A stretch of 64,000 nt of DNA from Hydrolagus colliei (GCA_035084275.1 CM068756.1:14694001-14758000), one strand, 5' to 3'. Counted from the first letter of the stretch, positions 11,454-60,450 are shown. Numbers and translations are program-made. The notes: a model not told the origin generated them from the sequence alone.

Positions 11454-11529
11454 GTAACTTTATATAATTTATCTCAGCAGGTTTATCATCTTGCAAGCTG
11501 ATATTGAACGAAAACACAGAGATTGTTCT

Positions 11530-12966: not shown

Positions 12967-13089
12967 GTAAGGGTAATAAACCTCATGAAGCTAATAGTCA
13001 AGAAATGTTACAATACTAGGTATCAAAGCTGATTATTGGTTCATCTTGAGCATACTCCCTTCCATATAGATTAGGTGTCACTTATGGGT

Positions 13090-29371: not shown

Positions 29372-30092
29372 GTAAGTGTTAAACCAGCGCAGATCTGGAT
29401 CGTTGCTATCTTATCATATTAGGCGAGCATATCTAACTAATACACTGTACTCTGAAGGGAATCAAAATTAGGCTGAGAACGACATGAGTGCACATCATTT
29501 AATTTGGGCAATTTTCTAGTAGCTAACCCTAACCTGCTTCTGAAGAATATAGTCTGGCAAGTACCAATGTTTGGGTCCCGCTGGAATTTAATCAGCTAAA
29601 GTCACATACTTGTCCAGCAACTTGAAATAACTGTCTGACAAGATTCCCGCTGTTTATTTTGGGTCGACAAGCCCGGCGTTACTCATTTGTATTGCAAGGT
29701 TAAACAGGAGCTGAATGGGAAGAATCTCTGCCCCCATAACTGTCTGCCTCTAATCCCTGCCAATGAACCTGGCTGGCGGGTCTGTCACCAGCAAGGTCCG
29801 GGATTTCTCAGGACCCGTCAATGTTTGGAATCGAAATACTGACACAGAGGATTGACTGAGTTGCAACATTGCGTTGCTATGCTCATGGAGCCAGTTCAGC
29901 TCCAAGGAGACTCGGATAACCCCAATAGGAGAATCATCTAGGAGCTATAAACACGATAAACGTGCAAGTAACCAATTCAATGCAAGTCAATATTTGTTAG
30001 GTGTGTACTGGAAATAATTCGAATAGAACTGTCCTAGTAGCACAATTCAGGGTTGTTTAACATCTCTAGAATATCCATGTGTAGGTGGGATC

Positions 30093-32766: not shown

Positions 32767-32952
32767 CAATTTAAGATAAGTGACAGTAATCAACTTTGAT
32801 GTGGACAACTATTTTCACAAATCCCCACGATACACTGGGAACCAATCACCTGACCTGACAGAGGCTGGAAGTCAGTCACCACGCCTTAGATGTAAAATCT
32901 TAAACAACTATAACTACTTACTACAGCCAACGATTATTAGTCTCAATACCTA

Positions 32953-33013
32953 ATGAGAATGTCAGCGAGTTTTGTGTTTCAGCATGCATGTCTGTTAGGA
33001 TTGGTTTCCACAG
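32953..33013 (+). CDS. Gene C exon 1, signal peptide (MRMSASFVFQHACLLGLVST)
   Basis: Phase-1 donor G|GTGTGT; paralog at 48318. Confidence 0.78.
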
Positions 33014-33175
33014 GTGTGTATTCTTTTTTTAATCTAATTTGACAAAAATGGACATAGATTATATCATTTTATATAATTTTCTATTGATAGAGCAAGTCTG
33101 TATCTTGCTCTGTGCATTACTTTGTCTTTTGCTGTAATTCTCTTTCTAATTTATGTTTGAATTTATTTCTGATAG

Positions 33176-33496
33176 TTGTTGACGGTACAATGATCAGAGT
33201 GACCCAAATCCCAGATCATATGGAGGCAATTAGAGGCACTAACGTTACCTTCCACTGCATGTTTCCTGACGCTCAATCCAACTCACGTGTAAAAGTTTAC
33301 TGGTTGAAAGAGGGAGAGAATAGCTACCTGCATACAAGGGAGGATAAAAGACAACTGTTTGAGTTTGAAAGTGAACAAAAAAGCTTCTTTAAACTCCAAA
33401 ATGTGAATCTCCAGGACTCTGGTGTGTATCATTGTGTTCTCGTGCTTCAGGGGAAAATAGCGGCCAGTGGACCTGGATCACGTCTGGATGTATGGG
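33176..33496 (+). CDS. Gene C exon 2, IgV domain
   Basis: FHC...VYWLK...DSGVYHC...SGPGSRLDVW; gatag| acceptor, G|GTAGGT donor. Confidence 0.9.
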
Positions 33497-34691
33497 GTAG
33501 GTATGGTTTCAGTGAAGAACGGCAATATTCCAAAATAGATTTTGAGCCAAAAACTCTGACCATGTGTGAAGGACATTTTGATTGTTCTTAGAATATGAAA
33601 CAGGTGTTTCAAAATGTTATCCTTTTAAATGAATCTTCCTGGGACCAGGTGGGGTCTGCTTGGAGATGACTCCCGAAGTATTCACTTGACAATAGAATGT
33701 CTGAATCATATCAACCCTCTGCAATGGCCTCAGTGGTCCAGGTATTGACCCAGGCAGGGCTGCAGTATTCTGGGGGCACTTCTATACAGCCCAGCCAGCC
33801 TGACTCATCATTTGGAAGAGCAGAGAAAGCCTGGTATAATGGGCCACTGTTAACTCTGCAGGCAATATAGCCTTCTTGGGTATGGTTATGTCACATAGCT
33901 CATACACTCATGTGCAATAGCAAATCTTAATTTTATTATTCTTATCGTATTCTTACATGTTTGAAAAGTACATGCTACAGTGTTGGCCGGGAAGGTTGCA
34001 TTACCAGCAGTGCCTTTATTCTGATAAGATCAACAGCCATCCCGCCATTTGAGATTAACAATAAAAAAAATTACATGTTTGAAAAGAGAAGTATTTATTG
34101 GTGTGCTGATGAACACATCCATGATTGTATCCCCAGAAAAAAATGCAAATACAAAAAACTTTATGATTTGAGGGATTTCAACAAAACAAGGACCTATATC
34201 GGATGCAATGGTATTCAAAAATAATTTAATTAAGGTTTTGACAATTTCAAACCACAACTTTTTATTACCGGTAAATAAACTAAATACATTTAGTCAAATA
34301 CATTTTTAGTAATGAACTATTTCTTCACTTTACTGAGTAGGAATACAACAGAGCATACCAGTGTTGGCTATATTGCTGTTGTGACTATGTATATGGCTCG
34401 AACATTATTTTTCCCTCCGGAGTTTCTATCGATAACTATAAAAAACTTTTCCTTATTGCTCCATTCCAGGTAAGAAAACAGAATTAAAAGATCAAATTTG
34501 TATTAACGGGGAGATACATCAGAAGTATGAAAAATGATGTTTTTAGTGGAGATTGAGAAATTCAATGACAATTGTGCTAGCTTTACATGGTGTATTTGTT
34601 TACTTTTTGGAAAAACTGTAGTGACAATAAAGTTTAATCTCCACCAACTGAGTGTAAGTTCTGTAATTCTGCTGTACTGTTCGTTCTACAG

Positions 34692-35003
34692 TTCCTCCAA
34701 CTCCACTGAAAATCTTCTCCAACGTTACTAAAATAGGATCGCCAGTGCCTCTGACTCTTGTGTGTGAAACCACTGCATTTTATCCAGAGAATCTTAACCT
34801 CACTTGGTATAAAAATGGCACCAAAATTACATCTCGAATAGATATCTCTAAACAACGGAACGCAGAGGGATTGTATGAAGTTTCAAGCTTTGTGGAAGAG
34901 AATAAGCCTGTCCAAAGTGGGGTTGTTTATATCTGTCAGGTTTCTCACATCAGCCTTCAGATTCCAGAAATTGCTAACTATATAGTTCAGTTCTCCGACA
35001 CAG
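34692..35003 (+). CDS. Gene C exon 3, C1-set domain
   Basis: LVCETTAFYPENLNLTWY...YICQVSHISL; 312 nt, donor CAG|GTAGGA. Confidence 0.9.
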
Positions 35004-36475
35004 GTAGGATGCCCACAATCTTACTGTCAATTAATTTTTTCATGGTTTTTTTTAGTATCTGATTATATTTCCTGCGTGTTTACGAGTTGAAGCAAATCCC
35101 ATATTTTCTTTCTATTGTATTGGTGAGTTCGGATTTGACTGCTCATTTTCACTGATATCGGAATGAGATCTAGAGATCACTCCGTGGATGCACCCAGCCG
35201 TCCGTTTATAGTAATGATAATAATAATCATCTGTGTCCTTGGCTTTGATATAACACTTGGTAATGTTATTGATGCATCTCAAAATGCTTCACATAATGTA
35301 TATGAAATTGTATTGATTGTGTATATTGACATTAATTTCACCTAAATTGAACATTGCGACCCATGCTCATAGTTTTCCGGTAGAAAGATAGTACGAGAAG
35401 TCAGCTACAATTACAATTTTCACAGATATGCATATAAACTATACATTGCACTCTTTATGCAGAGTAGTCCATGGGACATACCACAGTTGGGGGCTTGGAA
35501 GCTGGGGCTTGATCATAGCTTCTGTCAAAGAGGGAAATGTTAAAGTGGTATTAAAATTAATTAAGAAGGGGGCCAGGCAGAGGGATTAAGGCAGGGATTT
35601 CCAAAGATTAGGACGGGAAATTCGACCAAGGATTACAGTTGTTGGACTTCCCCAGGCTTGCTCGTGACATCTGAGTAATGGGGACGACAGAGGAATGAGG
35701 TTAGAGAGGTTGGGGGCTGTTCGAGTATGAACATGAGACTGAGGGACCTGAAATCTATTCCTTTGAAGCCATGAAGGGAGTCCACGGTCATCAGCGTGCT
35801 GATTTTAACTATGTGAGGACACCAGTGATCCAGATTTGGATGAATTGGACCTTGTAAATGGTGGAACTGGGTGAGCCAGTAAGGAGTCTGTTTGCACTCA
35901 ATGGTGAGATGCAAAAGATGTGAAAAAGTTTATTAGTGGCATCTGGTGTAAGTCAAATACTAGTCGTCTTTCTCTCTTCCAAATAATTAACATTCAGCAA
36001 GCTTCCCTACTCCCCACACCTCTGTTTACCTAGCAATAGTTATTATTCGATTGGTGGTTTGCTTTTCCTGAAGTAATAAAGCCTTGAAAAAAAATCATAT
36101 GTTATTCACTCAATGCACGATTGTTTGTGGGACACTGCTGTGCTCAACTGGCTGTTGCCGGTTGCTCCCAAAATATACAGTCAATTCACTTTATGGTGCA
36201 TTCTGTGAAGCCTTGGAGATGTCTCAAAATATGATAACAACAAAATTAGATTTTGCTCCCACCTTGCTCATTGGGAGAACGTCCAGGTGCAAGTGCAAGG
36301 ATGACATTGACAATTATTATTATTATTAATAAAAACCTACCTGATATTTAATCTCCATTAGAGTTCAGTGATGTTTGCCTTGGCATGTCGTGACTTGTGT
36401 CACCCCCCAGTCTAAACCAATTTCTGTTGAACCCTACCCTGCACACTGGCTCATGGTTCTGTCTTTACTTCATAG

Positions 36476-36591
36476 TTTCTAACAGAGAACGCAATATTAT
36501 AATTTTCCGGTATGTATGCAGTGCGTTGGTAATACTTCTCTTGACTATCATCGTTGTGGACCATTTCAGAATTCATCCCATTCAAAGGTAA
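36476..36591 (+). CDS. Gene C exon 4, TM with Arg and short tail (NIIIFRYVCSALVILLLTIIVVDH...IQR*)
   Basis: ttcatag| acceptor in phase 1; hydrophobic run containing R; total CDS 810 nt = 270 codons. Confidence 0.75.
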
Positions 36592-43019: not shown

Positions 43020-43564
43020 TGTTCAATTCTGGTCACCACACTACAGAAAGGATGTGAAGGCATTGGAAAGGGTACAACAAAGATTTACTAAGATGGTGCC
43101 AGGATTGAGGGACTTCAGCTATGAGGAGAGGCTAGATAGGCTAGGGTTATTCTCTCTGGAGCAGAGAAGATTGAGGGGAGACCTAATAGAGGTTTATAAG
43201 ATCATGAGGGGTTTCGACAGGGTAAATAGAGAAAAACTATTTCCACTCGTGGGTGAATCTGTGACTCGTGGTCACAGATTTAAAATAGTTTCAAGGCGCA
43301 GTAGAGGGGAACTGAGGAGAAATATTTTCACTCAGTGAGTTGTTCGAATCTGGAATGCATTGCCTGAAAAGGTGGTGGAGGCTGATTCGATAACAACTTT
43401 TAAAAGGGAATTAGATCTTTATTTAGGGAGAACGGGTCTATTAGGCTATGGGGAGCGGGCAGGGCAGTGGGATTGAATCGCTCTTTTCAAAGAGCCGGCA
43501 CAGACTAGATGGGCCGAATGGCCTCCTTTTGTGCCGTAAAATTCTATGATTCTATGATTCTATG
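43020..43564 (+). mobile_element. CR1 LINE 3' fragment inserted in a SINE
   Basis: KALERVQQRFTKMVPGL...RRLRGDLIEVYK; (ATTCTATG)n tail; SINE halves on both sides. Confidence 0.9.
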
Positions 43565-44339
43565 AAAACGCAGTGCCAATTGCACACAATAATACATTAT
43601 TATATTGAAGTGTTTCAAAGGAAATTACTGAGAAATGCACTGACTGTATAGTAGGCAAACACTGACATCAATTTCTGCAAAGTAGAATTTTACCAACAGC
43701 CATGAAATTGTGGTAATTGTTGCGATTTTGCATTTTTACAGTCGTGAATAGAAATGTAGCTTTACAAAAAAAATCCCATGTTTGAAGCGACAAACTCAAA
43801 TTATGTGAAATCTCTGTACTGTGTATTTCTGCCTAAATACTGAGGAATAATTTTTAACATGAGAAAAATTTGTGATATTACTATTTTGAAAATTAGTTTT
43901 TATACCAAGTATCTTGAATTGCATTCAATAAAATATTAGCTGAATATATGTCGGGTTTTTTCATGACCAAATAGGCATGCAGAGATATGTGCCTCATACC
44001 AGGAGCTGTTACAAAAATACCAACTAATCCTGCTTCACATTTTCCTGTTTGTGTTTTATGTGATTATCTTACACTCATCTGCCCAACAAGATCAACAACT
44101 TACTGTTCAAAGTGCGGCCATTCATGTTGCAATGGAGGGTATGAGGGACATGTAGGAATCAAAGCCACTCAATTATAGGCAGCAATAGTTGGTTGGTGAT
44201 TAAACAGGCTGGAGAGGTAGCGAGGTGCCAGGGCATGAAGACAATATAATTATAAACCTGCCTAGCAGCTATATACCTTTAGTGTTCATTGTCATTTTTG
44301 ATCAAATGTGTTAGTTTAAGCGGGTTAAGCTTTTTGGTC

Positions 44340-45599: not shown

Positions 45600-46260
45600 G
45601 AACTCTCTCCTCGTCGGTCTCACCAGCTCTTCCCTTCACAGGCTGCAGATCATTCAATAACCACAACTTTGATTCATATAGCGCCTCCACGCCGGACTGC
45701 GTCTCAGAGCGCATTCAAAATTCTACAGCTCGTGTACACTCCCGTAACAAGCTTTGCGACCACATCACTCCCACCCTCGCCCATCTCCATTGGCTCCTCA
45801 TCACCCAGAGGATAGAATTCAAGATCCTTGTCCTCACTTTCAAGGCCATTCATGGTCTTGCTCCCCTATCTCTCTGACCTACTGTCTTCCTATCAGCCTG
45901 CGCGCATCCTCCATTCAGCAGACTTAGGCCTCCATGTGCACTGCCCTAACCGCCCAACCATTGACGGCTGGGCTTTCAGCCTCTCTGCTCCCACACTGTG
46001 GAACTCCATCCGCACCCCCCGACCCGCCTTGATTCGTCCCTTTCCTCTTTCAAGGCCAGTCTCAAGACCTTCCTCTTCGACTGCGCCTTCGGCTGCCCCA
46101 CAAACTCTTCCCCCTCTCCCACTCTCGTCCCCTTCCCCTTACTCCGACCCTCCTGCACCCCGCTCGGGTCCTGACCAGACTGTTCAGCGCCTTGGGACGT
46201 CCTACTGACGTGAAAGGTGCTTTATAAGTGCAATTTTGTTGTTGTTGTTGTTGTTTGTTG
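45600..46260 (+). mobile_element. L2 3' fragment
   Basis: IQNSTARV...HITPTLAHLHWL...RIEFKILVLTFK; (GTT)n tail. Confidence 0.8.
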
Positions 46261-47600: not shown

Positions 47601-48317
47601 TGAAAAGCAGCCAATATTAGTTTAAAAAAAAGCTTGATGTTATTATGATTTAAACTTGAGTGCAAGTTTAAAGCAGTCAAACTGCCAGTTAAGTCTTTTG
47701 TTGGTGTTTACTGTCATTATTGTTGTTGATTTGGAAAGAAGATATCAGACCTTCTTTAACATAATTAATTCTGTGATCTTGTGATGTAATACTAATCATT
47801 TTACAACAACAAAATTACAATTGCATAGCACTTTTCGCATTGGGAAGATGTCCCATGACACATTGCTTGGAATCTGAGCTGGGGTCGTGATCAGGGATGA
47901 TATATGGATGACGTGGTGGGGGAAGGTGGGTGACCGATCGACGACACGGTCGAAGAGCAAGGTCTTGGAAGAAACATGAAATTTGCCCTGATTCATATTG
48001 ACATGAAGTACAGCTCTTTGAGTTTGGATTGAAAAGTTAGTTCCCCTTGGTAAAAAGTGTAAAAACAATAACATCAAAATAAACTTTGAGTGTTACCTTC
48101 AGATGGAATTTAGACCCTGTTGCCAATTAAATAACTGAAAGTAATCAACCTTTAAGTGGATAACTGTCTTTGTAAATCTAATCAAACACTCAGAGCCAAT
48201 CGTTTAAACTTACAGAGACAGGAAGTCAGTCGTCATGGCCTTTTATATAAATGCTTAAAACAACCGTAATTACTTAATAGTGAGCAATAATAGCTTCATC
48301 CTTGGTCTCAATCCACG

Positions 48318-48378
48318 ATGAGAATGTTGGTGAGCTTTGTGTTTCTATGTGTACATTTAATCCAGATAATTTTCACAG
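48318..48378 (+). CDS. Gene D exon 1, signal peptide (MRMLVSFVFLCVHLIQIIFT)
   Basis: Phase-1 donor G|GTATGT. Confidence 0.78.
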
Positions 48379-48528
48379 GTATGTGCTCCTTCTATACCAC
48401 AATTTGTCAAAAAGTAAGATAAATGACATAATTTGATATTATTTATTGATAGAATAAGTCTCTTCGCATTGCTTTGTCTCGCGTACTAAATTCTGTTTCT
48501 AATTAGCATTTGAATTTATTTCTGATAG

Positions 48529-48846
48529 TTGTTGATGGTACAATGACCAGAGTGACCCAACTCCCCGACCATGTGGAGGCAATTAGAGGCACGAACGTTA
48601 CCTTTCAGTGCATGTTTCCTGACACTCAATCCAACCTGCGTACAAAAGTGTATTGGTGGAAGCAGGAAGACAATGTATACCATACGAAGCCGGATAAAAG
48701 AAAACTGTTTGGGTTTGACAGCAAACAAAGCAGTTTCTTTAAGCTCCTAAATGTGAGTCACCAGGATTCTGGTGTGTATCAGTGTGCCCTCATGATTGAG
48801 GGAAAATTAGTGGCCAGTGGACCTGGATCACAGCTGATTGTATGGG
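48529..48846 (+). CDS. Gene D exon 2, IgV domain (intact)
   Basis: FQC...VYWWK...DSGVYQC...SGPGSQLIVW; close paralog of the gene C V exon. Confidence 0.9.
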
Positions 48847-50695
48847 GTAGGTATGGAATATTCCAAATTAGATATAGTGCCAAAAATTGTAGAAAAGGAT
48901 AAAAGATGTTGAATTATTTTAAGAATATGAAATGGGTGTTTCAAAATGTTGTCCTTTAAAATGTATCCTCCTGGGGGGAGGTGGGATCTGCTTGGAACTG
49001 AACTAGCTCCCGGGTAACATGCTTGCAATAGAATGTCAGAAACAGGTCAACCCTGTGGGATAGCTGTGGGATTCTCTGGTTCCTGAACCAAGGCACTTCT
49101 GAGGACAGCCCAGCCAGCCTGACTGATCAGCAGGACTTGGAGAGGCAGAGGAGTCTCTAGGGGCAGGGATTGTTCTCACTCAGCTTCCGTTAACCCTGCA
49201 GGTCAAACCCATAATTCTTCTACTTGTCCACAATGGACAAACAGGGGAAAAGCTTGTGAGATAGAGCTCTCGTTGACAAGATAAGGGGTTTTAGCTGTTT
49301 AGATTCCAACAATACCCAACAAACACTCAGGGATTCCCAAGCTTTGGTTTTGCTAGCAATTGCATAATACTCTGTGGAATTACAAAATGCGGGATGGGTC
49401 AGTTTGGAAAGTCAGTGCACATTTCATTCCAATACATGGGAATTTCCACATGTGGGTGGATACATGGTTTGGTTTTGGATACTCTTCTACTGCGCGTATT
49501 AGACCACTGGTTAATCAAAACGTCTCTTTAAAAAAGAACTTTACTAAATAACTGAATGTTGTATATCTCCATATGTTTGAGAAGCACATGCTAGAGTGTT
49601 GGGCAGGAATGTCGGGGAGCTTTGCATTTCCAGAAGTGCCTTTATTTGGATACGATCAATATCCAGTCTGCAGGATGGGATTGATGTTAGAAAAATGACA
49701 CTGTTCGGAGAGACGAGTTTCTTGGTGTGCTGAAGAACATATCAATTCTATCTGTCTCCAGATAAAATTGCTCATTCAAAACACTTGTGATGTGCATTTG
49801 AGGCATTTCAAAATCACAATCAAATACAGTATAAGGATTTTAGAAAAAATTAATTAAGATTTAGACAATTTCAAGCCCATATTTTTATTCAAATCAAATT
49901 CAGTCATCAGTTAGATATACTTAGTTGAATACAATATCAGTAATTAACTATTTCTTCATCTTACTGATGAGGAAAACAATAGCGCAATAGCGCATATCAG
50001 CATTGGCTACTTTGCCGTTATCACATATATTGCTTCAAAATGTATTATCTTCTCTGGATTTTAAATCTGGAACTGTAAAACAATCAAGTTTTTCTTATTA
50101 CTCCAGTTCCATTTATGGAATAGTTTGAAAAGATAAATTTGTATTAATGGGGAGAGGCAATCGGAATTATGGAAAATAATATTTTATTTAGTGAAAATTG
50201 AGACATTCACTGACATTTTGTGCTGGCTTTTCATTGTATATTTATTTGCTTTTGGGGGAACTGTAGTGACAAAGTATCTTTCCCATAACAACTTTTATAG
50301 TTGTCGTGAATGGCGAACAAATCAAAGTTAGAACAAAATATTTAAAAATACTAATCCCTGCATTTGGCTTTTCACATCTTCTAGACATCTTAATCCACTT
50401 CACGGAATATGCTATAAAGTGAATTGACCTCATATCTGTGGACAAAACACGGCAGCCAATTGTGCACAGCAATGTCCCGCAAACAGTCATAGAATGAAAA
50501 AGATTTTGTCCAGCTTGGAATTGTTTAAATACAAAGCAAATGAATCAGAATCAAAATGCTGTATTGAACGGAATAAAATGAAAATCATAATAAAGTTTAA
50601 TCTCCACCAGTTGATTGTACGTTTTTGTAATTCTTCTGTACTGTTTGATGTGAAAGGCGCTATACAAATGTAATTTTGTTGTTGTTGTTCTATAG

Positions 50696-50996
50696 TTCCT
50701 CCAACTCCACTGAAGATCTTCTCCAAAGTTACAAAAATAGTTTCGCCTCTGGCTCTTGTGTGTGAAACCAATGCATTTTATCCAGAGGATCTTAACCTCA
50801 CTTGGTATAAAATGGCACCAAAATTACATCTGGAATAAACATCACTAAACAGCAGAATGCAGAGGGATTGTATGAAGCTTCAAGCTTTGTGGAAGAGAAC
50901 AAGACTGTCCAAAGTGAGGTTGTTTATATCTGTCAGGTTTCTCACATCAGCCTTCAGATTCCAGAAATTGTCAACTACACAGTTCAGTTCTCCAAC
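50696..50996 (+). pseudogene. Gene D decayed C1 exon
   Basis: Versus gene C: 1-bp deletion in the A run at 50809-50812 giving TAA at 50836-50838; donor segment gacacaggtaggatgcc deleted near 50994; about 40-bp L2-type tail inserted in the acceptor (50648-50690). Confidence 0.85.
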
Positions 50997-51499
50997 AATG
51001 TTATTGACAATTAATGTTAATTGTTTCTCACCCAAATATTTTATCACAATCTGATTATATTTTCTGTGTGTTTACGAGCTGAGGTAGGTCCCATATTTTA
51101 TTTCTATCATATGGTGAGTGCAGATTTGCCTGTTCATTTTCACTGTAATGTGCTGTAATTCAGAGATGACTCCATGGATGCATCCAGGCGTCCGTTTCTA
51201 ATACAATTATTCCTCGTTTAACATTGTAGTTGTGTTCTCAAGAAGTACGACATTAAGCAAACCCGTTTTTCCGATATAAATTAATGTATAAACTGGAGTT
51301 AGGTTATTTTGTACATTTTTGAAGAAAATGTTCTAAAAAAAAATTATATTTGCTCCCTGACTGCCTGCCCGGCTCACTCTCTTGCTCCCTGCCTGACCTG
51401 TTCATTTCCACCCGCTAGTGAACGACGCAATAGCGAATGTCACAACGTTAAATAGTTATATATTCCCTATGTATCAGCAACGTAATAATAAAACAATTT

Positions 51500-52220
51500 T
51501 GACCGAAGCAACAAAACAACGTTCACCAGGTTCGATCCCCAATTATCCTTCCTCCCCCGCATCCAGTCGCTCACCAGCACTGCCGTCTTCCATCTCCGAT
51601 GCATCGCCCGTCTCCACCAATATCTAACCCCAAAAGCTGCCAAAACCCTGGTCGATGCCTTTGTCACCTCTTTGCTGGACTATTCAAACATCCTCCTTGC
51701 CAGTCTCCCCTCCGTCACAATCCACAAAATCCAGCTCATACATAACTCCGTCACCTGCATTCTCACCCGTATACAACTGCTCCCCGATTACCCCTGTTCT
51801 TGCCAGACTGCACTGACTCCCTGTCCCGCAGAGGATCAATTTCAAGATCCTCACGCTTGTATTAAAATCCCTCCACTCCTCTGCACCCCCCTACCTCTCT
51901 GACCTCCTCTCCCCTCACATCAGCACCCGTTAGCTTCACTCTACCGGGTCTGGCCTCCTCCTTGTCTCCCAAATCCTCCGCTCCACCACCGGCAGCCGTA
52001 CTTTCAGCCACTACACCCAGAGGCTCTGAACTCCCTCCCTCACTCCCTTTACCTCGCCCCCTCCTTTCCTATTTTCAGGTCTCGGACCTTTCCTTTCGAC
52101 CGCATTTTTGTTCACCTTGTTCCCCTTCCCCCTTGCCCCACCCCGGGATCCTTTATTGGGAAGCGCTCTGAGATGCCATTCAGCATGGAGGGCTCTATAC
52201 AATTCCAAGTTGTTGTTTTT
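51500..52220 (+). mobile_element. L2 3' fragment
   Basis: LDYSNILLASLPSVTIHKIQLIHNS; tail aagttgttgtt. Confidence 0.75.
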
Positions 52221-52669
52221 CTTAAGCAGGGTCTACTTGTAATATTAATAACAACAACAAAATTACATTTATAAAGCGCCTTTAATATCAGGAGGATGTC
52301 CCAAGCCGCTAATTGTCAATTAATCTTTATTTTTTTCACAAGAATATTTCCTGATATTAATTACAACAAATTAGGTAATGTCCTCTTAGGCTTCCCATGC
52401 AAACATACTTATATTTTTCTATCAAATCTAGTTTTTACTATCTACTTTGCAATATATCCTGTGAAACATTGGAAGACATGCTTCCAATGTGAAAGGCATG
52501 CTATTCAATGGTTATTATTATTTACTATTATGTCTCTTTACTTGTGCATCTTCAACAACAAATTAGATTTGCATAGTGTCTTTCACAGTCATTGGTAAAT
52601 TCTGCTTACATCACTAAATGGAATACAGTACTCCTGTTTTACCTTTTCACACTTGTATTGTCATTACAG

Positions 52670-52771
52670 GAAATAATACTGATAAATTAATACAGGTATC
52701 TGGATGTGCAGGATTGACATTTCTTGTGCTTTTAGTCATTGGAATATCATGTCGATTTATGAAACGGAATG
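52670..52771 (+). CDS. Gene D TM exon, uncharged core (SGCAGLTFLVLLVIGISC-RFMKRN)
   Basis: 102 nt phase 1-1, homologous to the gene A TM exon. Confidence 0.85.
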
Positions 52772-52968
52772 GTAAGACATATTAAGGTTTTAATCAGACT
52801 TAAATTTTATTTTTACTTTAATCTAATACTTCAAAGAGTAGATTAACAGGTACCTGGTTGGCATGGCCATTGAAGTGATTTGAAGGATAAAGAATAAACC
52901 AATGCAATTTATTTTACTGCAATTTACATCGCATTTACATCGATGAGGAGAAATTTTTTATTACATCG

Positions 52969-53224
52969 CTGAGGAGAAATTTTTTCACTCAGCGAGTTGT
53001 TCGAATCTGGAATGCATTGCCTGAAAAGGTGGTGGAGGCTGATTCGATAACAACTTTTAAAAGGGAATTAGATCTTTATTTAGGGAGAACGGGTCTATTA
53101 GGCTATGGGGAGCGGGCAGGGCAGTGGGATTGAATCGCTCTTTTCAAAGAGCCGGCACAGACTAGATGGGCCGAATGGCCTCCTTTTGTGCCGTAAAATT
53201 CTATGATTCTATGATTCTATGATT
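52969..53224 (+). mobile_element. Short CR1 3' end in a gene D intron
   Basis: Near-identical to the 3' ends at 43310-43564 and 58387-58640; (ATTCTATG)n tail. Confidence 0.9.
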
Positions 53225-54281
53225 TAGAAATAGATAAGACCAAACTGGTGAATTTAATTAGATGTTTGTTTACAACAAAAGTACAGCGAATATCTCAAGT
53301 ATTGGCAGAAAAGTGCATATAGAAATTTTAGAATTTATATCAAACATGTCTTGTTTGGTGGCATTTACATTAGTGGTGAGTGTAAATATTGCAGAAATAT
53401 TCTGGCAAAATCTGACATCAAAAAATGTTTCATTTAAAAAATTTAACCAAGACAAATAAAGCAGGAAATCAGGTTGGAAATATAGACAGAAAGGGATTAT
53501 AATCAGTTCATGTCGTTTTTCAGTCTGAGAAGGAGCAAAATACACTGGTTGTTCTCATTGTCTTTTATCAATGCCTGTCATGAACACAATAAAAATAACG
53601 ACACCGACTTGCGGCCCATGTCCTCTACCATTGCAAACTCCGTGATCCCATCTCCCCCATCCTTGCCTGACTCCATTGTCTCCCCAGCATCCAGAGGATC
53701 CAATTCAAGATCCTGGTCCTCATATTTAAAGACCTCTACTACCTCGCCCCACCCTACATCCGTGACCTCCTATCCTTTTACCAACCTGCAATCCATATCC
53801 CAATCCCATAAAATCGGTCACTCAATCCACAACTGTTTGTGGGACACTGCTTTGCGCATTTGACTGCTGCTTTTCACCCACAAATGTACAGTCAAGTCAC
53901 TTTACAGTATATAATGTGAAGTGCTTTGAGATGTCTAGAAGATGTGAAAAGGCGCTATATCAAATGCAAGGATTATTATTATTATACAAAAGTGGAACTC
54001 ACAGCCTAATTTGGATATATTTTAGGTTGGTGTTTCTCCATGTGTCAGATACCAGGCTCACCAAAAACACATGATGTCTGGGTTGTTTTAAATTATTTTA
54101 CATGTAATGGTAAAGGAAGATTGATGCTGCCCTTGTCCTGCACCTTGTTTTATATTTGATAAAGTGTCCCAGAAAGCTCTTGGGCAACCAAATCACTTGC
54201 GTTTATTCACCTGTTTCCTGGGAATATAAACAACTTGAAAATTGGCTACACATTTCACTTTTTGAATTTCTTTCATTTCAG

Positions 54282-54325
54282 GATCACACAGGAAGCTGAA
54301 TGGATGTGACATTCGTACAGATCAG
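54282..54325 (+). CDS. Gene D short cytoplasmic exon (GSHRKLNGCDIRTDQ)
   Basis: 44 nt phase 1-0, homolog of 11410-11453. Confidence 0.8.
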
Positions 54326-55023
54326 GTAAAGTACAGATTTAATTCAAGAAGATGTTTCTGTGTTATGATTGAATAAGATCCTTGGTGCTATAATGACGTC
54401 CGAATATTTTGAACAGGGACTGGATATTCTTACCATTGTTAACATCGAATGCTGCATTTATTCTTTTCTATTTCTTACAATTCTTGTCCCCTTCACTGTG
54501 TCATTCATATATTCCCCCTAAGCTATCGATATGCTTAATACATGGCTCAATGTGCAATACAACACTGTTGCATAAATCTGCATAAAACGATGCAAGTGAT
54601 ATGTTAATACTGTATTTGAAATATAGCTGCTGATGTTTATTTCTATTTCAATAGCCTGAGATTTGTACATTAAACAAATATGGGACTGTATTATATGATG
54701 TTTAATGCACAGACATGAGCAGTGTGTTTAAAATGGGCCTGAAAATATTAGCTGTACTTTGAGGTACAGTAAACTACAGGTCCAAGACTCTTCCTCGACT
54801 CCTTTCAGGCCCAACTGAATGCGAGGTTTGGTGAGAGATGAATGCATACCTGTATCTGGGTCTCCAATACAGATTCATTGCATTTAGCCGGTCTCCCCGC
54901 AGATTATATAACAAGCCAAGTTTCAAGTTCCAAATTAATATTTAGATACTGCATTGCTTAACCAACAGTGGAGCCCAGTGAAGACCAGGAACCAACCAAG
55001 TAACCTCACCTTGTGTTTTACAG

Positions 55024-55110
55024 AAAGTCCATGAAACAATGTATGAGACAGTGGGATATGTCCCATCTGATTTGAAAACACATCCACAGGAATTGGTAGT
55101 AGGTGCTAAG
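55024..55110 (+). CDS. Gene D cytoplasmic exon with ITSM TMYETV
   Basis: ttttacag| acceptor, AAG|GTACAT donor, 87 nt phase 0-0. Confidence 0.65.
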
Positions 55111-55648
55111 GTACATACAATCATGATACACACCCTTTATAACTAATATGATATTCTGCTATATTACATAAAATTAAACTGATATTTATTCTTTAGAATA
55201 AAGTTGATTGTGGAATGCAACAGCTTTTCCTCCTCCTAAAATTTTTCCTCTCCTCAGACGCTTGTCTGGATTCAGTTTCTTTTGCAAATTAGTGCACAAA
55301 TAGTCCAAATAATCATTCTTCATGTGTCAGATGAGTCAGTTAGTATGGCAAAATATGTGACACTGGAGAGATCACCAATTGAATATGTCCATAGTGAGAT
55401 TAATAACCACTTCTCACTGGCCAATTAACACTGCCCACAAACTAAGAGATACCAATTCTATTTGCATTTATCACGGCATAAAAAGGAGACTGATGACTGG
55501 GATCTCTGGCTTTATAAATCTGAGTTTAGCATTGAGTGGTGCTTTACTGGATGAGAAATAGGGTGCGAAGTTTTAAATAGTTACTCGAGATTTCTAAATG
55601 CTGACAAAATGAATTAGTAACTGGAAATCTCAACCTTTATCTTTACAG

Positions 55649-55852
55649 ACCAAACAAGTAGCAGCCGGTAACATGTTGACATATACAAATTTGAACTTGT
55701 CTGGCTCCAACACAAAGGAAAAGAGAAATCCTGAATGCAGTGATAGTAAAACAGAGTATGCCCAGGTACACGTGAGAAAACACGCAGCAGCACAACAGAC
55801 CACATACAAGGAACCAACCGTAGCAGAATGCTACAACATAGGTGGAAGCTGA
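55649..55852 (+). CDS. Gene D terminal exon with ITIM LTYTNL and ITSM TEYAQV
   Basis: ctttacag| acceptor, open to TGA; motif order resembles the SIRP-alpha ITYADLNL...TEYASI pair; a possible internal donor at 55766. Confidence 0.8.
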   Translation, partial: TKQVAAGNMLTYTNLNLSGSNTKEKRNPECSDSKTEYAQVHVRKHAAAQQTTYKEPTVAECYNIGGS

Positions 55853-56749
55853 TTGCTGCATGTTGGTACCATTCTGTGATACAGATCATATCAGACCTGC
55901 TTTGTCAATCTAGCATATTTCAAACATAACTGTACATATTTGCGACTTTACCTTTTCTTCCCATCCTTACGTGGCCCCCATCCCCCAGAGGAGTTCCAGA
56001 TACTCATCTTCAATTTTAAATCGCTACACCATCTTACCCCCCTATCCCCACCACCTCTGCAACCTTCTTTAACAATAATAATCTGACCTTCCATCAGATC
56101 AGCAAGTACTGACATGCTTTATGCTCCCTGTGGCACGATCGGCAGTGGGGCTTTCAGCCTGTCTGCTTCCGCTCTCTGGAACGCCAACCAGAAGTCCATT
56201 TACCTTGTACCTTCCCTCAACTCATTCAAGACTTTGGTCAGTTTCAGTTGCTTAACCTCACACTTTCATCGGCCCCTTCTCCTCCCAAACCTTGGGACAG
56301 CTGCAAATCCTCGATAGTTCATTACCTTGGGATAATATCCCTCTGACTTGAAATATTCTACATAAATGCAACTTGTTGTTGCTGTATTTTTATAAAAGAA
56401 GTGTAAGAATATATTACTGGTTAGGCCCTATTATGCTACTTCATTGTAGGGAACGGCGATATGGGATTTTTCCGGATATGGATATATCGGTTTGCTCATA
56501 CCTGCTTAAATCGATCTATCGAGTTTTTATACTGCGCATGCGCGTGCATTCGAAGTGCGCGTGCATTGATGGCGCGCGCGCATTTATGGTGCGCGCTCAG
56601 TCGCGGTGCGCGCGCATTGACGGTGCGTCCGCACTGACGATGCGCGCGCAGTCGCGGTGCACGCACATTTCGAAATGCGTGCTCTAGGTCCAGAAAGTTT
56701 GTAATGTTGGTGTCAAGGTCTGTTGAATTATACGATGTTGTTTGCTCCC

Positions 56750-57570
56750 TACCTCCCCCTCTCCTTCTCTCGCTACCTCCTTCTCTCCCTCCTCTCCTCT
56801 TCTCTCCCTCCCTCCCCCCTCTCCTTCCCTCCCTCCCCCCTCTCCTNNNNNNNNNNNNNNNNNNNNNNNNNNNNNNNNNNNNNNNNNNNNNNNNNNNNNN
56901 NNNNNNNNNNNNNNNNNNNNNNNNNNNNNNNNNNNNNNNNNNNNNNNNNNNNNNNNNNNNNNNNNNNNNNNNNNNNNNNNNNNNNNNNNNNNNNNNNNNN
57001 NNNNNNNNNNNNNNNNNNNNNNNNNNNNNNNNNNNNNTCCTTTCCCCTCGCTCCTTCTCTCCCTCCTTTCCCCCTCTCCTTCTCTCCCTCCCTCTCCTCT
57101 CTTCCTCTCTCCTTCTCTCCCAACTTTCCCCCTCTCCCTCCCTCCCCTCTCTCCTTCTCTCCCTCCTTTCCCCTCGCTCCTTCTCTCCCTCCTTTCCCGC
57201 TCTCCTTCTCTCCCTCCCTCTCCTCTCTTCCTCTCTCCTTCTCTCCCAACTTTCCCCCTCTCCCTCCCTCCCCGCTCTCCTTCTCTCCCTCCTTTCCCCT
57301 CGCTCCTTCTCTCCCTCCTTTCCCCCTCTCCTTCTCTCCCTCCTTTCCCCCTCTCCTTCTCTCCCTCCCTCTCCTCTCTTCCTCTCTCCTTCTCTCCCAA
57401 CTTTCCCCCTCTCCTTCTCTCCCTCCCTCCCTCGCCTCTCTCCTTCTCTCCCTCCTTTCCCCTCGCTCCTTCTCTCCCTCCTTTCCCCCTCTCATTCTCT
57501 CCCTCCCTCCCCTCTCTTCCTCTCTCCTTCTCTCCCAACTTTCCCCCTCTCCTTCTCTCCCTCCATCTCT
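56750..57570. repeat. Polypyrimidine/polypurine low-complexity tract with assembly gap (N at 56847-57037)
   Basis: Almost pure C/T on the + strand with recurring roughly 120-bp higher-order units. Confidence 0.9.
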
Positions 57571-58386
57571 AAACACAAAATAGAACACACACACACCAAA
57601 AACAAAATCTGGAGATTTATTCTCCTCCATTTCTTGCTTGAAAGTAGCATGTAATGTCCACGTGTAAATGAGATCTATTACAATAGAAAAGAGAGAGACA
57701 GACAGTCTGACTGTTAGAGTTAGAAGCCAGATTATCACTGCTGTGTGTGTCTGACTAGACACACACATAGAGGCAGTGATAGTTTGGCTTCTAACTCTCT
57801 CACACACAAAAATAACACTTACAGCCACAAAATGCCACTTATTTTTATGTAGTCTGAAGTCTGAATTAATGTCCTTCGCCATTGGCAAGCTCTCCTTTGC
57901 TATGCAAAAAGTGACAGCGTTCGTGATACTTTGCCACTTTTTGTCCCCTCTCTGGTACAATGTTCTCCTCTTAAATAAAGCAGGAATTGTTTGAGCTGCA
58001 CTGGCCCCACTACCTGTCGCTTTCTCCGAAGCGCTGGTTCGACTTCCTGCTGTTGTCGACAATGATTTCGCTCTGAGGGCAGCGTGCTGGGCGGGGTGGT
58101 GCTGCTTAATGTGATGTCGCAGGTTGCTCGTGCTCGAATCAGATGTCTTAACCAAGACCTTGCAAACTGTACATCTATACACACCATTACTGACTGCATT
58201 GTTTTCAAAGTAGTTTTTCCCCATGATGAGAAAGGTAAATTTTCAAACTACAACTTTCAGCGATGCGACTTTGTTAAGACGCCACGACTCACGTCGAGTA
58301 TACGCAGTAAAGTGTGCGTGCGCATCGGATGTGCGCGCCCGTTAATTGTGCGCGCGCACCGAATGTACGCGCATTCCATGCTCTAG

Positions 58387-60450
58387 ATAGAATCATAGAA
58401 TCATAGAATTTTACGACACAAAAGGAGGCCATTCGGCCCATCTAGTCTGTGCCGGCTCTTTGAAAAGAGCGATTCAATCCCACTGCCCTGCCCGCTCCCC
58501 GTAGCCTAATATACCCGTTCTCCCTAAATAAAGATCTAATTCCCTTTTAAAAGTTGTTATCGAATCAGCCTCCACCACCTTTTCAGGCAATGCATTCCAG
58601 ATTCGAACAACTCGCTGAGTGAAAAAATTTCTCCTCAGCTCCCCTCTACTGCGCCTTGAAACTATTTTAAATCTGTGACCACGAGTCACAAATTCACCCA
58701 CGAGTGGAAATAGTTTTTCTCTATTTGCCCTGTCGAAACCCCTCATGATCTTATAAACCTCTATTAGGTCTCCCCTCAATCTTCTCTGCTCCAGAGAGAA
58801 TAACCCTAGCCTATCTAGCCTCTCCTCATAGCTGAAGTCCCTCAATCCTGGCACCATCCTAGTAAATCTTCGTTGTACCCTTTCCAATGCCTTCACATCC
58901 TTTCTGTAGTGTGGTGACCAGAATTGAACACAGTATTCCAGCTGAGGCCTCACCAAAGTCCTATAGAGGTTAGTCAGCACTTCCTGACTTTTGTACTCTA
59001 TACCCCTATTTATAAAGCCTAGTATCCCATATGCCTTCTTAACAGCCTTGTCTACCTGTCCTGCCACCTTCAACGAGTCACTAACACAAATCCCCAGGTC
59101 TCTCTGTTCCTTTACACCATTTAAAATTGTACTATCTAGCCTATATTGCCTCCCTTCATTTCTTCTCCCAAAATGCATCACCTCACACTTCTCTGCATTA
59201 AACTTCATCTGCCATGTGTCTGCCCACTTTACCAATTTGTCTATATCCTCTTGCAGATGGCTACTATCCTCCTCACTGTTTACTATTCTCCCTAACTTAG
59301 TGTCATCTGCAAACTTGGAAACTGTACTCCGTCCACCCAAGTCCAGATCATTGATGTAGATTACAAACAGCAATGGTCCCAAAACCGATCCATGTGGCAC
59401 ACCACTGCTCACTTCCCTCCAATCTGAAAAACAGCCGCTCACTACAACTCTCTGCTTTCTGTCTCGCAGCCAGTTGTGGATCCACGCTGCCACTGCCCCT
59501 TTTACGCCATGGGCCTTTAATTTCATAATAAGTCTCTCATGTGGCACTTTGTCAAATGCCTTTTGAAAGTCCATGTAAACTACATCAACTGCGCTACCAT
59601 TATCCACCCATTCCGTTACCTCATCAAAACATTCTATCAGATTTGTAAGGCAAGATTTGCCTTTAACAAATCCATGTTGACTGTCCTTTATTAGCCTATA
59701 TCTTTCTAAGTGAAGATCTACCTTGTCCCTGATTATGGACTCTAGAAGTTTGCCCACTACCGACGTTAGACTGACTGGTCTGTAGTTACCAGGCTTGTCC
59801 TTCTGCCCCTTTTTATACAAGGGAGTAACATTAGCTATCCTCCAGTCCTCTGGCACGACCCCTGTGTCCAAGGAAGATTGAAAGATCATGGCCAGAGTCC
59901 CTGCTATTTGCTCCCGTGCCTCACTTAGTAACCTAGGGTGCATCCCATCCGGACCAGGTGACTTATCCACCTTGAGCGACGTCAACCTTTTTAGTACTTC
60001 CTCTCTGGTTATAATTATTCTATCCATTTCTCCTACCCTCTCCTCTAATACCATGGCATTGGCTGTATCCTTTTCTTTTGTGAAGACAGAGGCGAAGTAC
60101 TCATTCAGTACATCAGCCATGCCCTCTGCCTCCACAATGAGATTTCCTCCTAGGTCCCTAATTGGCCCCACCCTCTCCTTGACCAACCTTTTACTCTTAA
60201 TATGTTGGTAAAAAACCTTAGGGTTCCCCTTAATCTTACTCGCTAATTGTTTTTCATGCAGTCTCTTTGCCCCTCTAACTTCCTTTTTGGTTCTATCCTA
60301 CACTTCCTATATTCTGCTTTGTTCCCTTCTGAATTTTGAGCCTGACACTTATCATAAGCCTCTTTTTTTTGTTTTATTTTGGCCCCGATTTCCTTAGTCA
60401 TCCAGGGAGGTTTGGATGCCTTACATTTCACCTTTGTGGGGATGCTTTTG
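58387..60450 (-). mobile_element. Young 5'-truncated CR1 LINE, open RT ORF 58474-60186 (570 aa)
   Basis: KSPGPDGMHP, NYRPVSLTS, YMDFQKAFDKV, GVPHGSVLGP, FADDTKL; (ATTCTATG)n tail. Confidence 0.95.

What the first reader, a model, noticed from the sequence alone, without database searches (positions are those of the whole stretch)
48318..55852. Gene D lost only its C1 exon, predicting an in-frame V-only ITSM-ITIM-ITSM receptor
Three lesions hit the C1 exon: a 1-bp frameshift, a deleted splice donor and a retro-tail in the acceptor. All six other exons stay open with canonical sites. V ends and TM begins in phase 1, so skipping gives exactly 816 nt = 271 aa plus stop. The product would be a single-IgV inhibitory receptor with a PD-1-like layout, evolved by exon death rather than gene death (inference).
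Basis: partly seen in the sequence, partly recalled or inferred. Interest (0 to 1): 0.8.

Follow-up and report, generated by a model that had tools for sequence, protein, structure and literature searches.

The report
SIRP-like receptor gene with dead C1 exon
One inhibitory member of a SIRP-like immune-receptor gene cluster in a chimaera-like fish genome has a broken middle (C1) exon but can still encode a shorter one-domain receptor, a form its relatives already make by exon skipping, so this is a plausible but unproven case of a known kind of exon loss.

Summary
Gene D (48318-55852, + strand) has six open exons with AG/GT sites that join to exactly 816 nt, or 271 aa plus stop. Its C1 exon (50696-50997) carries D-specific lesions:
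- a 1-bp deletion (A5 to A4) that gives a stop at 50836;
- a 5-bp deletion that removes CAG|GT, the donor;
- a 6-bp in-frame deletion;
- a 40-bp SINE-tail insert 11 nt upstream of the acceptor.

The insert is not a demonstrable lesion. The acceptor is as pyrimidine-rich as in the intact paralogues, and gene A has a similar tail there.

The gene belongs to a SIRP-alpha-like family, not to the PD-1 family. Its neighbour C is the activating-type partner and has its own arginine-bearing TM exon, which is conserved in Callorhinchus milii.

The phase argument applies to Ig exons in general. C1 skipping is already annotated in relatives: catshark isoforms X1 and X2 differ by exactly the C1 exon, and a C. 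milii gene skips an intact C1. So the V-only product is the fixation of an existing isoform, much like KIR2D pseudoexon 3.

D's C1 is 92% identical to C's, so the lesions are young. A rough Bayes factor of 5-25 favours continued constraint on the other exons, but it falls to an estimated 1-2 if the homopolymer frameshift is an assembly error.

Verdict: partly supported, a new member of a known kind.

The parts
48125..48317 (+). Gene D promoter block: CCAAT box, ETS-like CAGGAAGTCAGTC at 48219-48231, and a TATA-like ATATAAA
   Evidence: Aligns with the gene C promoter and with the C. milii co-orthologue at L005:21690-21880. The motif is found only upstream of C and D in the window and once, at the orthologous place, in the fetched loci.
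48318..48378 (+). D leader exon (61 nt, ATG, donor CAG|GTATGT)
48529..48846 (+). D V exon (318 nt, phase 1-1). VJ-type V-set domain with a J-like GPGSQLIV. Carries a D-specific in-frame 3-bp deletion after 48680.
   Evidence: Pfam V-set 8e-08. D-branch changes are 10 synonymous and 15 non-synonymous with the C. milii outgroup. Deletion located.
50271..50588 (-). D-specific SINE insertion in the V-C1 intron
   Evidence: 318-nt gap in C in the C/D alignment, with repeat matches elsewhere in the window
50645..50684 (+). 40-bp 5'-truncated SINE-tail insert, 11 nt upstream of the C1 acceptor
   Evidence: Absent from C. Matches SINE tails at 52247-52290, 46206-46249 and others. The acceptor is still 12/17 pyrimidines with TAG.
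50696..50997 (+). C1-set pseudoexon. Lesions: 6-bp in-frame deletion after 50744; 1-bp deletion after 50808 (A4 run 50809-50812); premature TAA at 50836-50838; 5-bp deletion of CAG|GT after 50997.
   Evidence: Alignment with the C1 exons of A and C. Pfam C1-set hits on both halves. Premature stop shown. 92.1% identical to C's C1.
51084..51119 (+). Cryptic donor candidates: GAG|GTAGGT at 51084 and ATG|GTGAGT at 51114
   Evidence: Rough donor weight-matrix scores of 5.0 and 6.3, against 1.3-5.7 for D's real donors. Either would add a frame-shifting exon extension.
52670..52771 (+). D stalk and TM exon (102 nt, phase 1-1)
   Evidence: The predicted helix spans residues 129-159 and begins two residues after the last V strand.
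52968..53220 (+). Young LINE 3' end in the TM-cy1 intron
   Evidence: 98.8-99.2% identical to copies at 43312-43565 and 58387-58639, the latter being the 3' end of the open RT ORF
54282..54325 (+). D cytoplasmic exon 1 (44 nt)
55024..55110 (+). D cytoplasmic exon 2 (87 nt). Contains TMYETV (ITSM-like). The family's first ITIM is degenerate here (VGYVPS) and the family's TVYAQ tyrosine is lost.
55649..55852 (+). D cytoplasmic exon 3 (204 nt including TGA). LTYTNL (ITIM) and TEYAQV (ITSM) sit at the family-conserved positions.
32953..36591 (+). Gene C, the activating-type partner (269 aa model). L 32953-33013, V 33176-33496, intact C1 34692-35003, own TM exon 36476-36591 (IIIFRYVCSALVILLLTIIVV, short tail, TAA stop).
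   Evidence: Model built. The TM exon is conserved in C. milii at L001:764-862 (E 9e-8) and L006:358-444, where it is the last coding exon of RefSeq XP_007902898.2.

Best explanation
Gene D is the inhibitory member of a SIRP-alpha-like activating/inhibitory receptor pair (C and D). It lies in a multigene cluster of a cartilaginous fish whose nearest database relative is Callorhinchus milii.

Shown by sequence:
- D's C1-set exon has become a pseudoexon through a frameshift and the loss of its 5' splice site.
- Joining V to TM is the only way to an open frame. It gives a 271-aa type I protein: signal peptide, one VJ-type V domain, almost no stalk, a TM helix, and a tail with one ITIM (LTYTNL) and two ITSM-like motifs.

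Inferred:
- Without a donor, the exon is no longer defined and the spliceosome joins V (48846) to TM (52670).
- Relatives with an intact C1 already make this isoform by alternative splicing. D would now make it as its only productive mRNA, and any C1-containing transcripts (for example through the cryptic donors at 51084 or 51114) would carry a premature stop.
- The product would recruit SH2-domain phosphatases, as SIRP-alpha does, and would oppose the signal of its partner C, which keeps V and C1 and has an arginine in its TM segment.
- The lesions are recent. This is best read as the fixation of an existing V-only isoform, not a new architecture.
For: - Exon arithmetic and motifs.
- Lesions are D-specific against two paralogues.
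- Family assignment: Pfam V-set and C1-set; best solved relatives are SIRP-gamma (7.5e-18) and SIRP-alpha (1.3e-16); the nearest proteins are the C. milii SIRP-alpha-like cluster.
- V-only relatives align collinearly with the skipped product, including the V/stalk/TM junction.
- Catshark LOC119970986 isoforms X1 (382 aa) and X2 (288 aa) are identical except for exact removal of the C1 exon.
- The only recorded product of C. milii LOC103185896 (268 aa) skips a C1 exon that is open, AG/GT-flanked and phase 1-1 (L001:11141-11461).
- A V-only splice form of mammalian SIRP-alpha has been reported: PMC3564380.
- Gene C has its own conserved TM(R)-stop exon, so D's TM and tail exons are not needed by C.
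- D's V exon shows no relaxation. Its D branch has 10 synonymous and 15 non-synonymous changes, omega about 0.4, no higher than C or the C. milii copy.
- D keeps the promoter block shared with C and C. milii.
- The ITIM and ITSM at family positions Y3 and Y4 are kept.
- Simulation: if the whole gene had been neutral since the first C1 lesion, the other 816 nt and 10 splice sites would still be intact with probability about 0.04-0.19. That is a Bayes factor of about 5-25 for continued constraint.
Against: - No transcript evidence could be reached with these tools.
- D's C1 is 92.1% identical to C's, against 73-77% in the introns. Its D branch has only about 7 substitutions, so the lesions are young and there has been little time for other exons to decay. 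At t = 0.005-0.01 substitutions per site the intact state is expected by chance in 34-59% of cases.
- The Bayes factor depends on how many C1 indels are counted as events after the exon died. I estimate it falls to about 1-2 (not computed) if the A4 frameshift is an assembly error and the 6-bp deletion came earlier.
- Strong cryptic donors lie 86 and 116 nt downstream and could keep the dead exon in the mRNA.
- D's membrane-proximal tail differs from the family consensus. The first ITIM is degenerate and one conserved tyrosine is lost, which could equally be early decay.
- No AATAAA or ATTAAA lies within 2.1 kb of the stop.
- Pseudogenes are common here; B is a lone V pseudo-exon.
Confidence: 0.55

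Rival explanations
1. D is simply a young pseudogene. A first hit in C1 ended selection on the whole gene. The other exons are open only because too little time has passed, and any V-to-TM transcript is noise.
For: - C1 is the least diverged part of the C/D duplicated unit (92.1% identity), and its D branch is short at about 7 substitutions.
- The probability that the rest stays intact by chance is 0.34-0.59 at t = 0.005-0.01.
- D's tail has a degenerate first ITIM and has lost a conserved tyrosine.
- No nearby poly(A) signal.
- The cluster contains other dead pieces, such as B.
Against: - With 2-4 independent D-specific indels in and around C1, the inferred neutral time (posterior mean 0.02-0.04) makes an untouched 816-nt frame plus 10 splice sites unlikely, at 0.04-0.19.
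- The V exon's omega on the D branch is about 0.4.
- The promoter block is conserved.
- A C1 lesion does not abolish the V-only isoform that relatives already make.
Confidence: 0.3
2. Part of the damage is an assembly error or a polymorphism. In that case D, at least in some individuals, is still an ordinary V-C1-TM inhibitory receptor.
For: - The frameshift is a 1-bp length change in an A homopolymer, the typical long-read error.
- In C. milii the orthologue of gene A shows just such a G4-versus-G5 difference in its C1 exon between the current assembly and the older protein model.
Against: - The 5-bp loss of CAG|GT, the 6-bp deletion and the 40-bp insert are not homopolymer errors.
- Even with the frame restored, no usable in-phase donor remains. 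The best GTs give exon lengths of 388 or 418 nt, both 1 mod 3, after an in-frame stop in the read-through.
Confidence: 0.07
3. D's TM and tail exons stay open because transcripts starting at gene C splice across D to use them. On this view C and D are one transcription unit with two alternative 5' cassettes.
For: - The C/D duplicated unit covers only promoter, L, V, C1 and about 200 bp.
- No inhibitory-type TM or tail exon lies between C's C1 and D.
- C's C1 donor is intact.
Against: - C has its own phase-1 TM exon with an arginine and a TAA stop at 36476-36591.
- That exon is conserved in C. milii and is annotated there as the last coding exon of a 302-aa RefSeq protein. Its ectodomain nearly matches that of a separate inhibitory gene.
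Confidence: 0.04

Closest known systems
SIRP-alpha / SHPS-1 (PTPNS1) family, including the annotated 'tyrosine-protein phosphatase non-receptor type substrate 1-like' cluster of Callorhinchus milii (LOC103185890-LOC103185896 on MU249845.1)
   Same: - VJ-type V domain followed by a C1-set domain, then a single TM and a tail with ITIM/ITSM tyrosines.
- The motif pair LTY..L(N/D)L ... TEYA.(V/I/L) is at conserved positions.
- The best solved-structure relatives are SIRP-gamma and SIRP-alpha.
- Activating-type partners with a charged TM residue and nearly the same ectodomain exist.
- V-only isoforms are known.
   Different: - One C1 domain rather than the two of mammalian SIRPs.
- In D that C1 is a dead exon, so V-only is the sole open product.
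- The activating partner carries Arg near the outer end of its TM segment, where SIRP-beta has Lys (the SIRP-beta detail is from my own knowledge).
- Orthology to tetrapod SIRPs, CD47 binding and phosphatase recruitment were not tested.
Pseudoexon 3 of human lineage III KIR (KIR2DL1-3, KIR2DS)
   Same: An Ig-domain exon is still recognisable inside an otherwise working receptor gene. It is left out of the mRNA, the frame is preserved, and the receptor has one Ig domain fewer. It is taken as evidence of descent from a longer form (PMC3504360).
   Different: - For KIR the skipping is shown by cDNA and the receptors are known to function. For D both points are inferred.
- KIR loses the membrane-distal D0 domain. 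D loses the membrane-proximal C1, which puts the V domain almost directly on the membrane.
- The gene families are unrelated.
Alternatively spliced V-only isoforms: mammalian SIRP-alpha, catshark LOC119970986 isoform X2, and C. milii LOC103185896
   Same: The same V-to-TM junction, produced by leaving out the C1 exon or exons. The junction aligns residue for residue with the predicted D product (PMC3564380).
   Different: In those genes C1 is intact and skipping is optional, or at least not forced by lesions. In D inclusion is lethal to the reading frame.
PD-1
   Same: One IgV domain, a TM segment, and a tail with ITIM and ITSM motifs.
   Different: - No specific sequence or fold affinity. PD-1 is absent from the 60 listed PDB sequence hits, out of 190 at E up to 1. 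It ranks 37th among generic V domains by fold.
- The motif order is ITSM-ITIM-ITSM rather than ITIM-ITSM.
- The V domain is VJ-type with SIRP-like relatives.

Membership tests
SIRP (signal-regulatory protein) family | N-terminal V-set Ig domain of VJ type | tested here: met
   Pfam V-set 8e-08 on residues 32-125. A J-like G-x-G-x-x-L-x-V (GPGSQLIV) is present. The model shows a beta-sandwich with pLDDT 56-81.
SIRP (signal-regulatory protein) family | C1-set domain(s) between V and TM | tested here: not met
   The gene has a C1-set exon (Pfam hits on both halves), but it is frameshifted and lacks a donor. Paralogues A and C meet this feature (2.5e-15 and 2.5e-12). The feature is met for the locus but not for any open product of D.
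SIRP (signal-regulatory protein) family | Closest characterised relatives are SIRPs | tested here: met
   The V-C1 of paralogue C gives SIRP-gamma 4i2x_E (7.5e-18) and SIRP-alpha 2wng_A (1.3e-16) as best PDB hits. The nearest database proteins are named SIRP-alpha-like or SIRP-beta-1-like by RefSeq and UniProt. These names are automatic.
SIRP (signal-regulatory protein) family | Cytoplasmic tyrosine motifs that recruit SHP-1/SHP-2 | tested here: inconclusive
   The motifs TMYETV, LTYTNL and TEYAQV are present, the last two at family-conserved positions. Phosphorylation and phosphatase binding cannot be tested here.
SIRP (signal-regulatory protein) family | Orthology or synteny with the tetrapod SIRP locus, and CD47 binding | not testable with these tools
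   No tetrapod genomes or binding assays are available. Only synteny with C. milii was shown.
Paired activating/inhibitory immune receptors | Neighbouring genes with similar ectodomains: one with an ITIM tail, the other with a charged TM residue and a short tail | tested here: met
   C and D share promoter, L, V and C1 homology only. D has an ITIM/ITSM tail. C has a TM exon with Arg and a 10-aa tail. That exon is conserved in C. milii, where it is annotated in P0169 alongside an inhibitory twin, P0152.
Pseudoexon-bearing Ig receptors (KIR2D type) | A recognisable Ig exon with disabling lesions inside a gene whose other exons are intact | tested here: met
Pseudoexon-bearing Ig receptors (KIR2D type) | The exon is absent from mature mRNA and the shortened receptor is expressed | not testable with these tools
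   No transcript data for this genome. There is only indirect support from annotated skipping in relatives.
PD-1 / CD28 family | Specific sequence or structural affinity of the V domain to PD-1/CD28-family members | tested here: not met
   PD-1 is absent from the 60 listed PDB sequence hits, out of 190 at E up to 1. By fold it ranks 37th, behind Ig-beta, TCR and antibody V domains. The model was of modest quality (mean pLDDT 51).

The most novel reading that the evidence does not exclude
In a chimaera-lineage SIRP-like receptor pair, the inhibitory member has been permanently turned into a one-domain (V-only) receptor because its C1 exon became a pseudoexon. Its activating partner keeps V and C1. 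The two partners would then present nearly the same binding domain at different heights above the membrane. This would be an independent, much older-lineage parallel to KIR2D pseudoexon 3, and an example of an alternative isoform being fixed through exon decay.
Probability: 0.45. Interest if true: 0.45.

Novelty: new member of a known kind. Interest (0 to 1): 0.35.

Why it matters
If transcripts confirm it, D would show that domain loss by pseudoexon formation also operates in a cartilaginous-fish SIRP-like family. That route is known from primate KIR genes. It would also show the route starting from an isoform the family already makes by alternative splicing.

The result would give a natural experiment on whether the C1 spacer matters for inhibitory signalling in a paired receptor.

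The wider by-product may be more useful than the finding itself. Holocephalans have a large SIRP-like cluster with activating members (Arg in the TM segment) and inhibitory members (ITIM/ITSM tail). I found no paper in the searchable library that describes it. If the finding is not confirmed, D is an ordinary young pseudogene in a birth-and-death gene family.

Tried and rejected
- The word-index protein search with the skipped product found nothing. The exhaustive HMMER search was needed.
- tblastn for inhibitory-type TM or tail exons between C and D found none. A hydrophobicity and splice-site scan gave one candidate, with about one chance hit expected per 13 kb. It became convincing only once it was found to be conserved in C. 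milii.
- Exact look-ups of P0003 and P0021 were not on record. As a result, the C1, TM and tail region of the C. milii co-orthologue and a true orthologue of D could not be fetched. No per-exon dN/dS on orthologues was possible.
- The 374-aa C. milii gene whose last exon is the closest match to D's (L002) turned out to have an unrelated V domain (P0009-type). It is not D's orthologue.
- dN/dS between the C. milii paralogues in L001 and L002 was uninformative: V 0.81, C1 0.90.
- Parsimony with gene A as outgroup is weak because dS is 0.65-1.2. The C. milii V exon was a better outgroup, but only for V.
- The structure model was of modest quality (mean pLDDT 51), and the fold search returned generic V domains.
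- Literature searches for SIRP-like genes in cartilaginous fishes found no relevant paper.
- I rejected the idea that the retro-tail disables the acceptor.
- I rejected the idea that the exact 816-nt fit is evidence of selection.


Full report
**1. What is in the sequence**

The window is repeat-rich vertebrate DNA with SINE tails, LINE reverse-transcriptase ORFs and one N gap at 56847-57037. On the + strand it carries four related immunoglobulin-superfamily units:
- Gene A, about 8301-13025: L, V, C1, TM and tail exons.
- B, 29050-29373: a lone V pseudo-exon with an in-frame stop.
- Gene C, 32953-36591.
- Gene D, 48318-55852.

The exons are L 48318-48378, V 48529-48846, TM 52670-52771, cy1 54282-54325, cy2 55024-55110 and cy3 55649-55852. 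Each is flanked by YAG and GT. Together they make 816 nt, or 271 aa plus stop. The product contains TMYETV, LTYTNL and TEYAQV.

**2. The lesions**

I aligned D's C1 region with the intact C1 exons of A and C. The following are D-specific:
- a 1-bp deletion after 50808 (A5 to A4);
- a 5-bp deletion after 50997 that removes the last three exon bases and the GT donor;
- a 6-bp in-frame deletion after 50744;
- a 40-bp SINE-tail insert at 50645-50684;
- a 318-bp SINE at 50271-50588, further upstream.

If C1 is included, the frame stops at 50836-50838. Apart from the frameshift, the exon has no other stop.

The tail insert does not visibly harm the acceptor. D has TAG with 12 of 17 pyrimidines, against 12/17 in C and 11/17 in A, and gene A also has a SINE tail just before its C1 acceptor. 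That leaves two disabling lesions, not three.

A rough donor matrix, with weights from memory, finds no usable GT at the old position. It does find strong cryptic donors at 51084 and 51114, so C1-containing nonsense transcripts remain possible.

**3. What family this is**

Pfam finds V-set in D and C1-set in A, C and both halves of D's dead exon. The V-C1 of C is closest, among solved structures, to SIRP-gamma (7.5e-18) and SIRP-alpha (1.3e-16).

An exhaustive HMMER search with the skipped D product gave 149 hits. The best are Callorhinchus milii proteins from one scaffold, named 'tyrosine-protein phosphatase non-receptor type substrate 1-like' (that is, SIRP-alpha-like), 'SIRP-beta-1-like', 'tapasin-related' or 'NCR3LG1-like'.

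Synteny with C. milii holds. The orthologue of A (V 73% identical) lies 12 kb upstream of a V exon that is 70% identical to those of C and D. The orthologous V exons of A have dS 0.26. The window therefore comes from a different species whose nearest database relative is C. milii, most likely another holocephalan (inference).

**4. C and D are a receptor pair**

C and D share DNA homology only from about 190 bp upstream of the ATG to about 200 bp past C1. No inhibitory-type TM or tail exon follows C.

There is, however, a phase-1 exon at 36476-36591. It encodes SNRERN-IIIFRYVCSALVILLLTIIVV-DHFRIHPIQR followed by a stop. It is conserved in C. milii at L001:764-862 (E 9e-8), including the arginine, the VDH.RI motif and the TAA that overlaps a GGTAA. 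At L006:358-444 it is the last coding exon of RefSeq XP_007902898.2. The ectodomain of that protein almost duplicates the ectodomain of the inhibitory XP_007902825.2.

C is therefore an activating-type partner and D is the inhibitory one. This removes most of the force from the idea that D's TM and tail exons are kept open for C's use.

**5. Is V-only plausible?**

Yes, and it is not new to the family.
- Catshark LOC119970986 has RefSeq isoforms X1 (382 aa) and X2 (288 aa). They are identical except for exact removal of the 94-aa C1 exon.
- V-only 'isoform X2' or 'X4' models also exist in Mobula and Heterodontus.
- In C. milii the only recorded product of LOC103185896 (268 aa, collinear with D's product over residues 6-249) skips a C1 exon that is open, AG/GT-flanked and phase 1-1 (L001:11141-11461).
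- A V-only splice form of mammalian SIRP-alpha is reported in PMC3564380.
- All these proteins align with D's product across the V/stalk/TM junction.

It follows that the 'exact 816 nt' fit is a general property of these exons and is not evidence in itself.

The closest conceptual precedent is pseudoexon 3 of lineage III KIR. That Ig exon is left out of the mRNA and yields two-domain receptors (PMC3504360).

**6. Exon death or gene death?**

Between C and D the identities are as follows:

| Region | Identity |
|---|---|
| Introns | 73-77%, with about 2.2 indel events per 100 bp |
| V exon | 82.7% |
| Leader exon | 64% |
| C1 exon | 92.1% |

C1 has dS 0.17, below both V (0.33) and the between-species value (0.26). 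The C/D split is at least as old as the species split, because C is closer than D to the C. milii copy in the promoter, leader and introns. Taken together, this suggests purifying selection, possibly with gene conversion between the partners' C1 exons.

D's C1 branch has only about 7 substitutions (1 synonymous, 6 non-synonymous), against 14 (7 and 7) for C. The direction fits relaxation, but the numbers are tiny and the outgroup is distant. The lesions are therefore young.

D's V exon shows no relaxation: 10 synonymous and 15 non-synonymous changes with the C. milii outgroup, omega about 0.4, compared with about 0.63 for C.

I simulated neutral decay of D's 816-nt frame and its 10 splice sites, using the local indel rate:

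| Neutral time t (substitutions per site) | Probability still intact |
|---|---|
| 0.005 | 0.59 |
| 0.01 | 0.34 |
| 0.02 | 0.11 |
| 0.03 | 0.04 |

I then combined the C1 substitution and indel counts into a crude posterior for t, which had a mean of 0.02-0.04. The chance that the rest is intact under whole-gene neutrality comes out at 0.04-0.19. That is a Bayes factor of about 5-25 for continued constraint.

This estimate is fragile. It shrinks to an estimated 1-2 (not computed) if the homopolymer frameshift is an assembly error and the in-frame deletion came before the exon died. A G4-versus-G5 difference between assemblies in the C1 exon of the C. milii orthologue of A shows that such differences do occur in this family. 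The pattern was also selected after the fact.

**7. The product**

- The signal peptide, both V cysteines, the Trp and the J-like motif are intact.
- The model shows a V-type sandwich with pLDDT 56-81. The TM helix (residues 129-159) begins two residues after the last strand, so there is virtually no stalk. The tail is disordered.
- The fold search returns generic V domains, with PD-1 only at rank 37.
- In the tail, the family's third and fourth tyrosine motifs are kept (LTYTNL and TEYAQV). The first ITIM is degenerate (VGYVPS), with a new TMYETV beside it, and the conserved TVYAQ tyrosine is gone. This is compatible with either lineage-specific tuning or early decay.
- The promoter keeps the CCAAT box, the ETS-like GGAAGTCAGTC and the TATA-like block shared with C and C. 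milii.

**8. Verdict**

D is best described as a SIRP-like inhibitory receptor gene whose C1 exon has become a pseudoexon. Its only open product is the V-only isoform that relatives already make. Whether that isoform is still expressed and selected is undecided on sequence alone. I put it at about 0.55, against about 0.30 for a young whole-gene pseudogene. This is a new member of a known kind, of moderate interest. Transcript data would settle it.

Noticed in passing
window 36476-36591 (+); L001:764-862; L006:358-444: Gene C has its own terminal TM exon with an arginine (IIIFRY...) and a 10-aa tail ending in TAA. It is conserved in C. milii and annotated there as the end of a 302-aa protein. 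This makes C an activating-type partner, and the cluster a set of paired receptors.
   Followed up: yes
L001:11141-11461 (C. milii LOC103185896): This C1 exon is open, AG/GT-flanked and phase 1-1, yet it lies in the V-TM intron and is left out of the gene's only recorded RefSeq product (268 aa). An intact C1 is being skipped in a relative.
   Followed up: partly
L005:9960-9975 (C. milii orthologue of gene A): The current C. milii assembly has CCAGGGGATTG (G4) where the older protein models need G5. This frameshifts the C1 exon and shortens the RefSeq model from 392 aa to 201 aa. It is a homopolymer difference between assemblies, of the same type as D's A4 frameshift.
   Followed up: partly
window 29050-29373 (+): Unit B is a lone V pseudo-exon with an in-frame stop (VY*WK). 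It is closest to gene A's V (dS 0.23). No C1, TM or tail exon was found with it.
   Followed up: partly
window 48219-48231 and 32865-32877 (+); L005:21782-21792: A conserved promoter block lies upstream of C, D and the C. milii co-orthologue: CCAAT, then ACAGAG.C.GGAAGTCAGTC with an ETS/PU.1-like GGAA core, then a TATA-like box. It hints at myeloid-type regulation.
   Followed up: partly
window 52968-53220, 43312-43565, 58387-58639; ORF 58474-60186 (-): There are three copies of a roughly 253-bp LINE 3' end, one of them in D's TM-cy1 intron, and the two others match that copy at 98.8-99.2%. One of the three is the end of an open 570-aa reverse-transcriptase ORF. The LINE family appears to be young and possibly active.
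   Followed up: partly
window 34692-35003 vs 50696-50997: The C1 exons of C and D are much more alike (92%, dS 0.17) than their V exons, introns or leaders. They are also more alike than orthologous V exons between species (dS 0.26). This suggests gene conversion between the activating and inhibitory partners, confined to about the exon plus 60 bp upstream.
   Followed up: partly
window 12240-13025 (+): Gene A's tail has TAHTQ where the family has TVYAQ, and a degenerate first motif. It keeps PTYALM and TEYGEV. Its full exon model was not completed.
   Followed up: no
window 56684-58224 (-): An ORF starting with a BED zinc finger (Pfam 5.6e-05) runs into a long GA-rich simple repeat that contains the window's only N gap (56847-57037). 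It is probably a domesticated or decaying hAT-type element.
   Followed up: no
L002:10001-13244 (C. milii XP_042196356.1): The RefSeq model (235 aa, 'tapasin-related') ends by reading through the C1 donor into the intron. Yet an inhibitory-type TM exon, containing one N, lies 1.2 kb downstream. The model is probably truncated by the ambiguous base.
   Followed up: no
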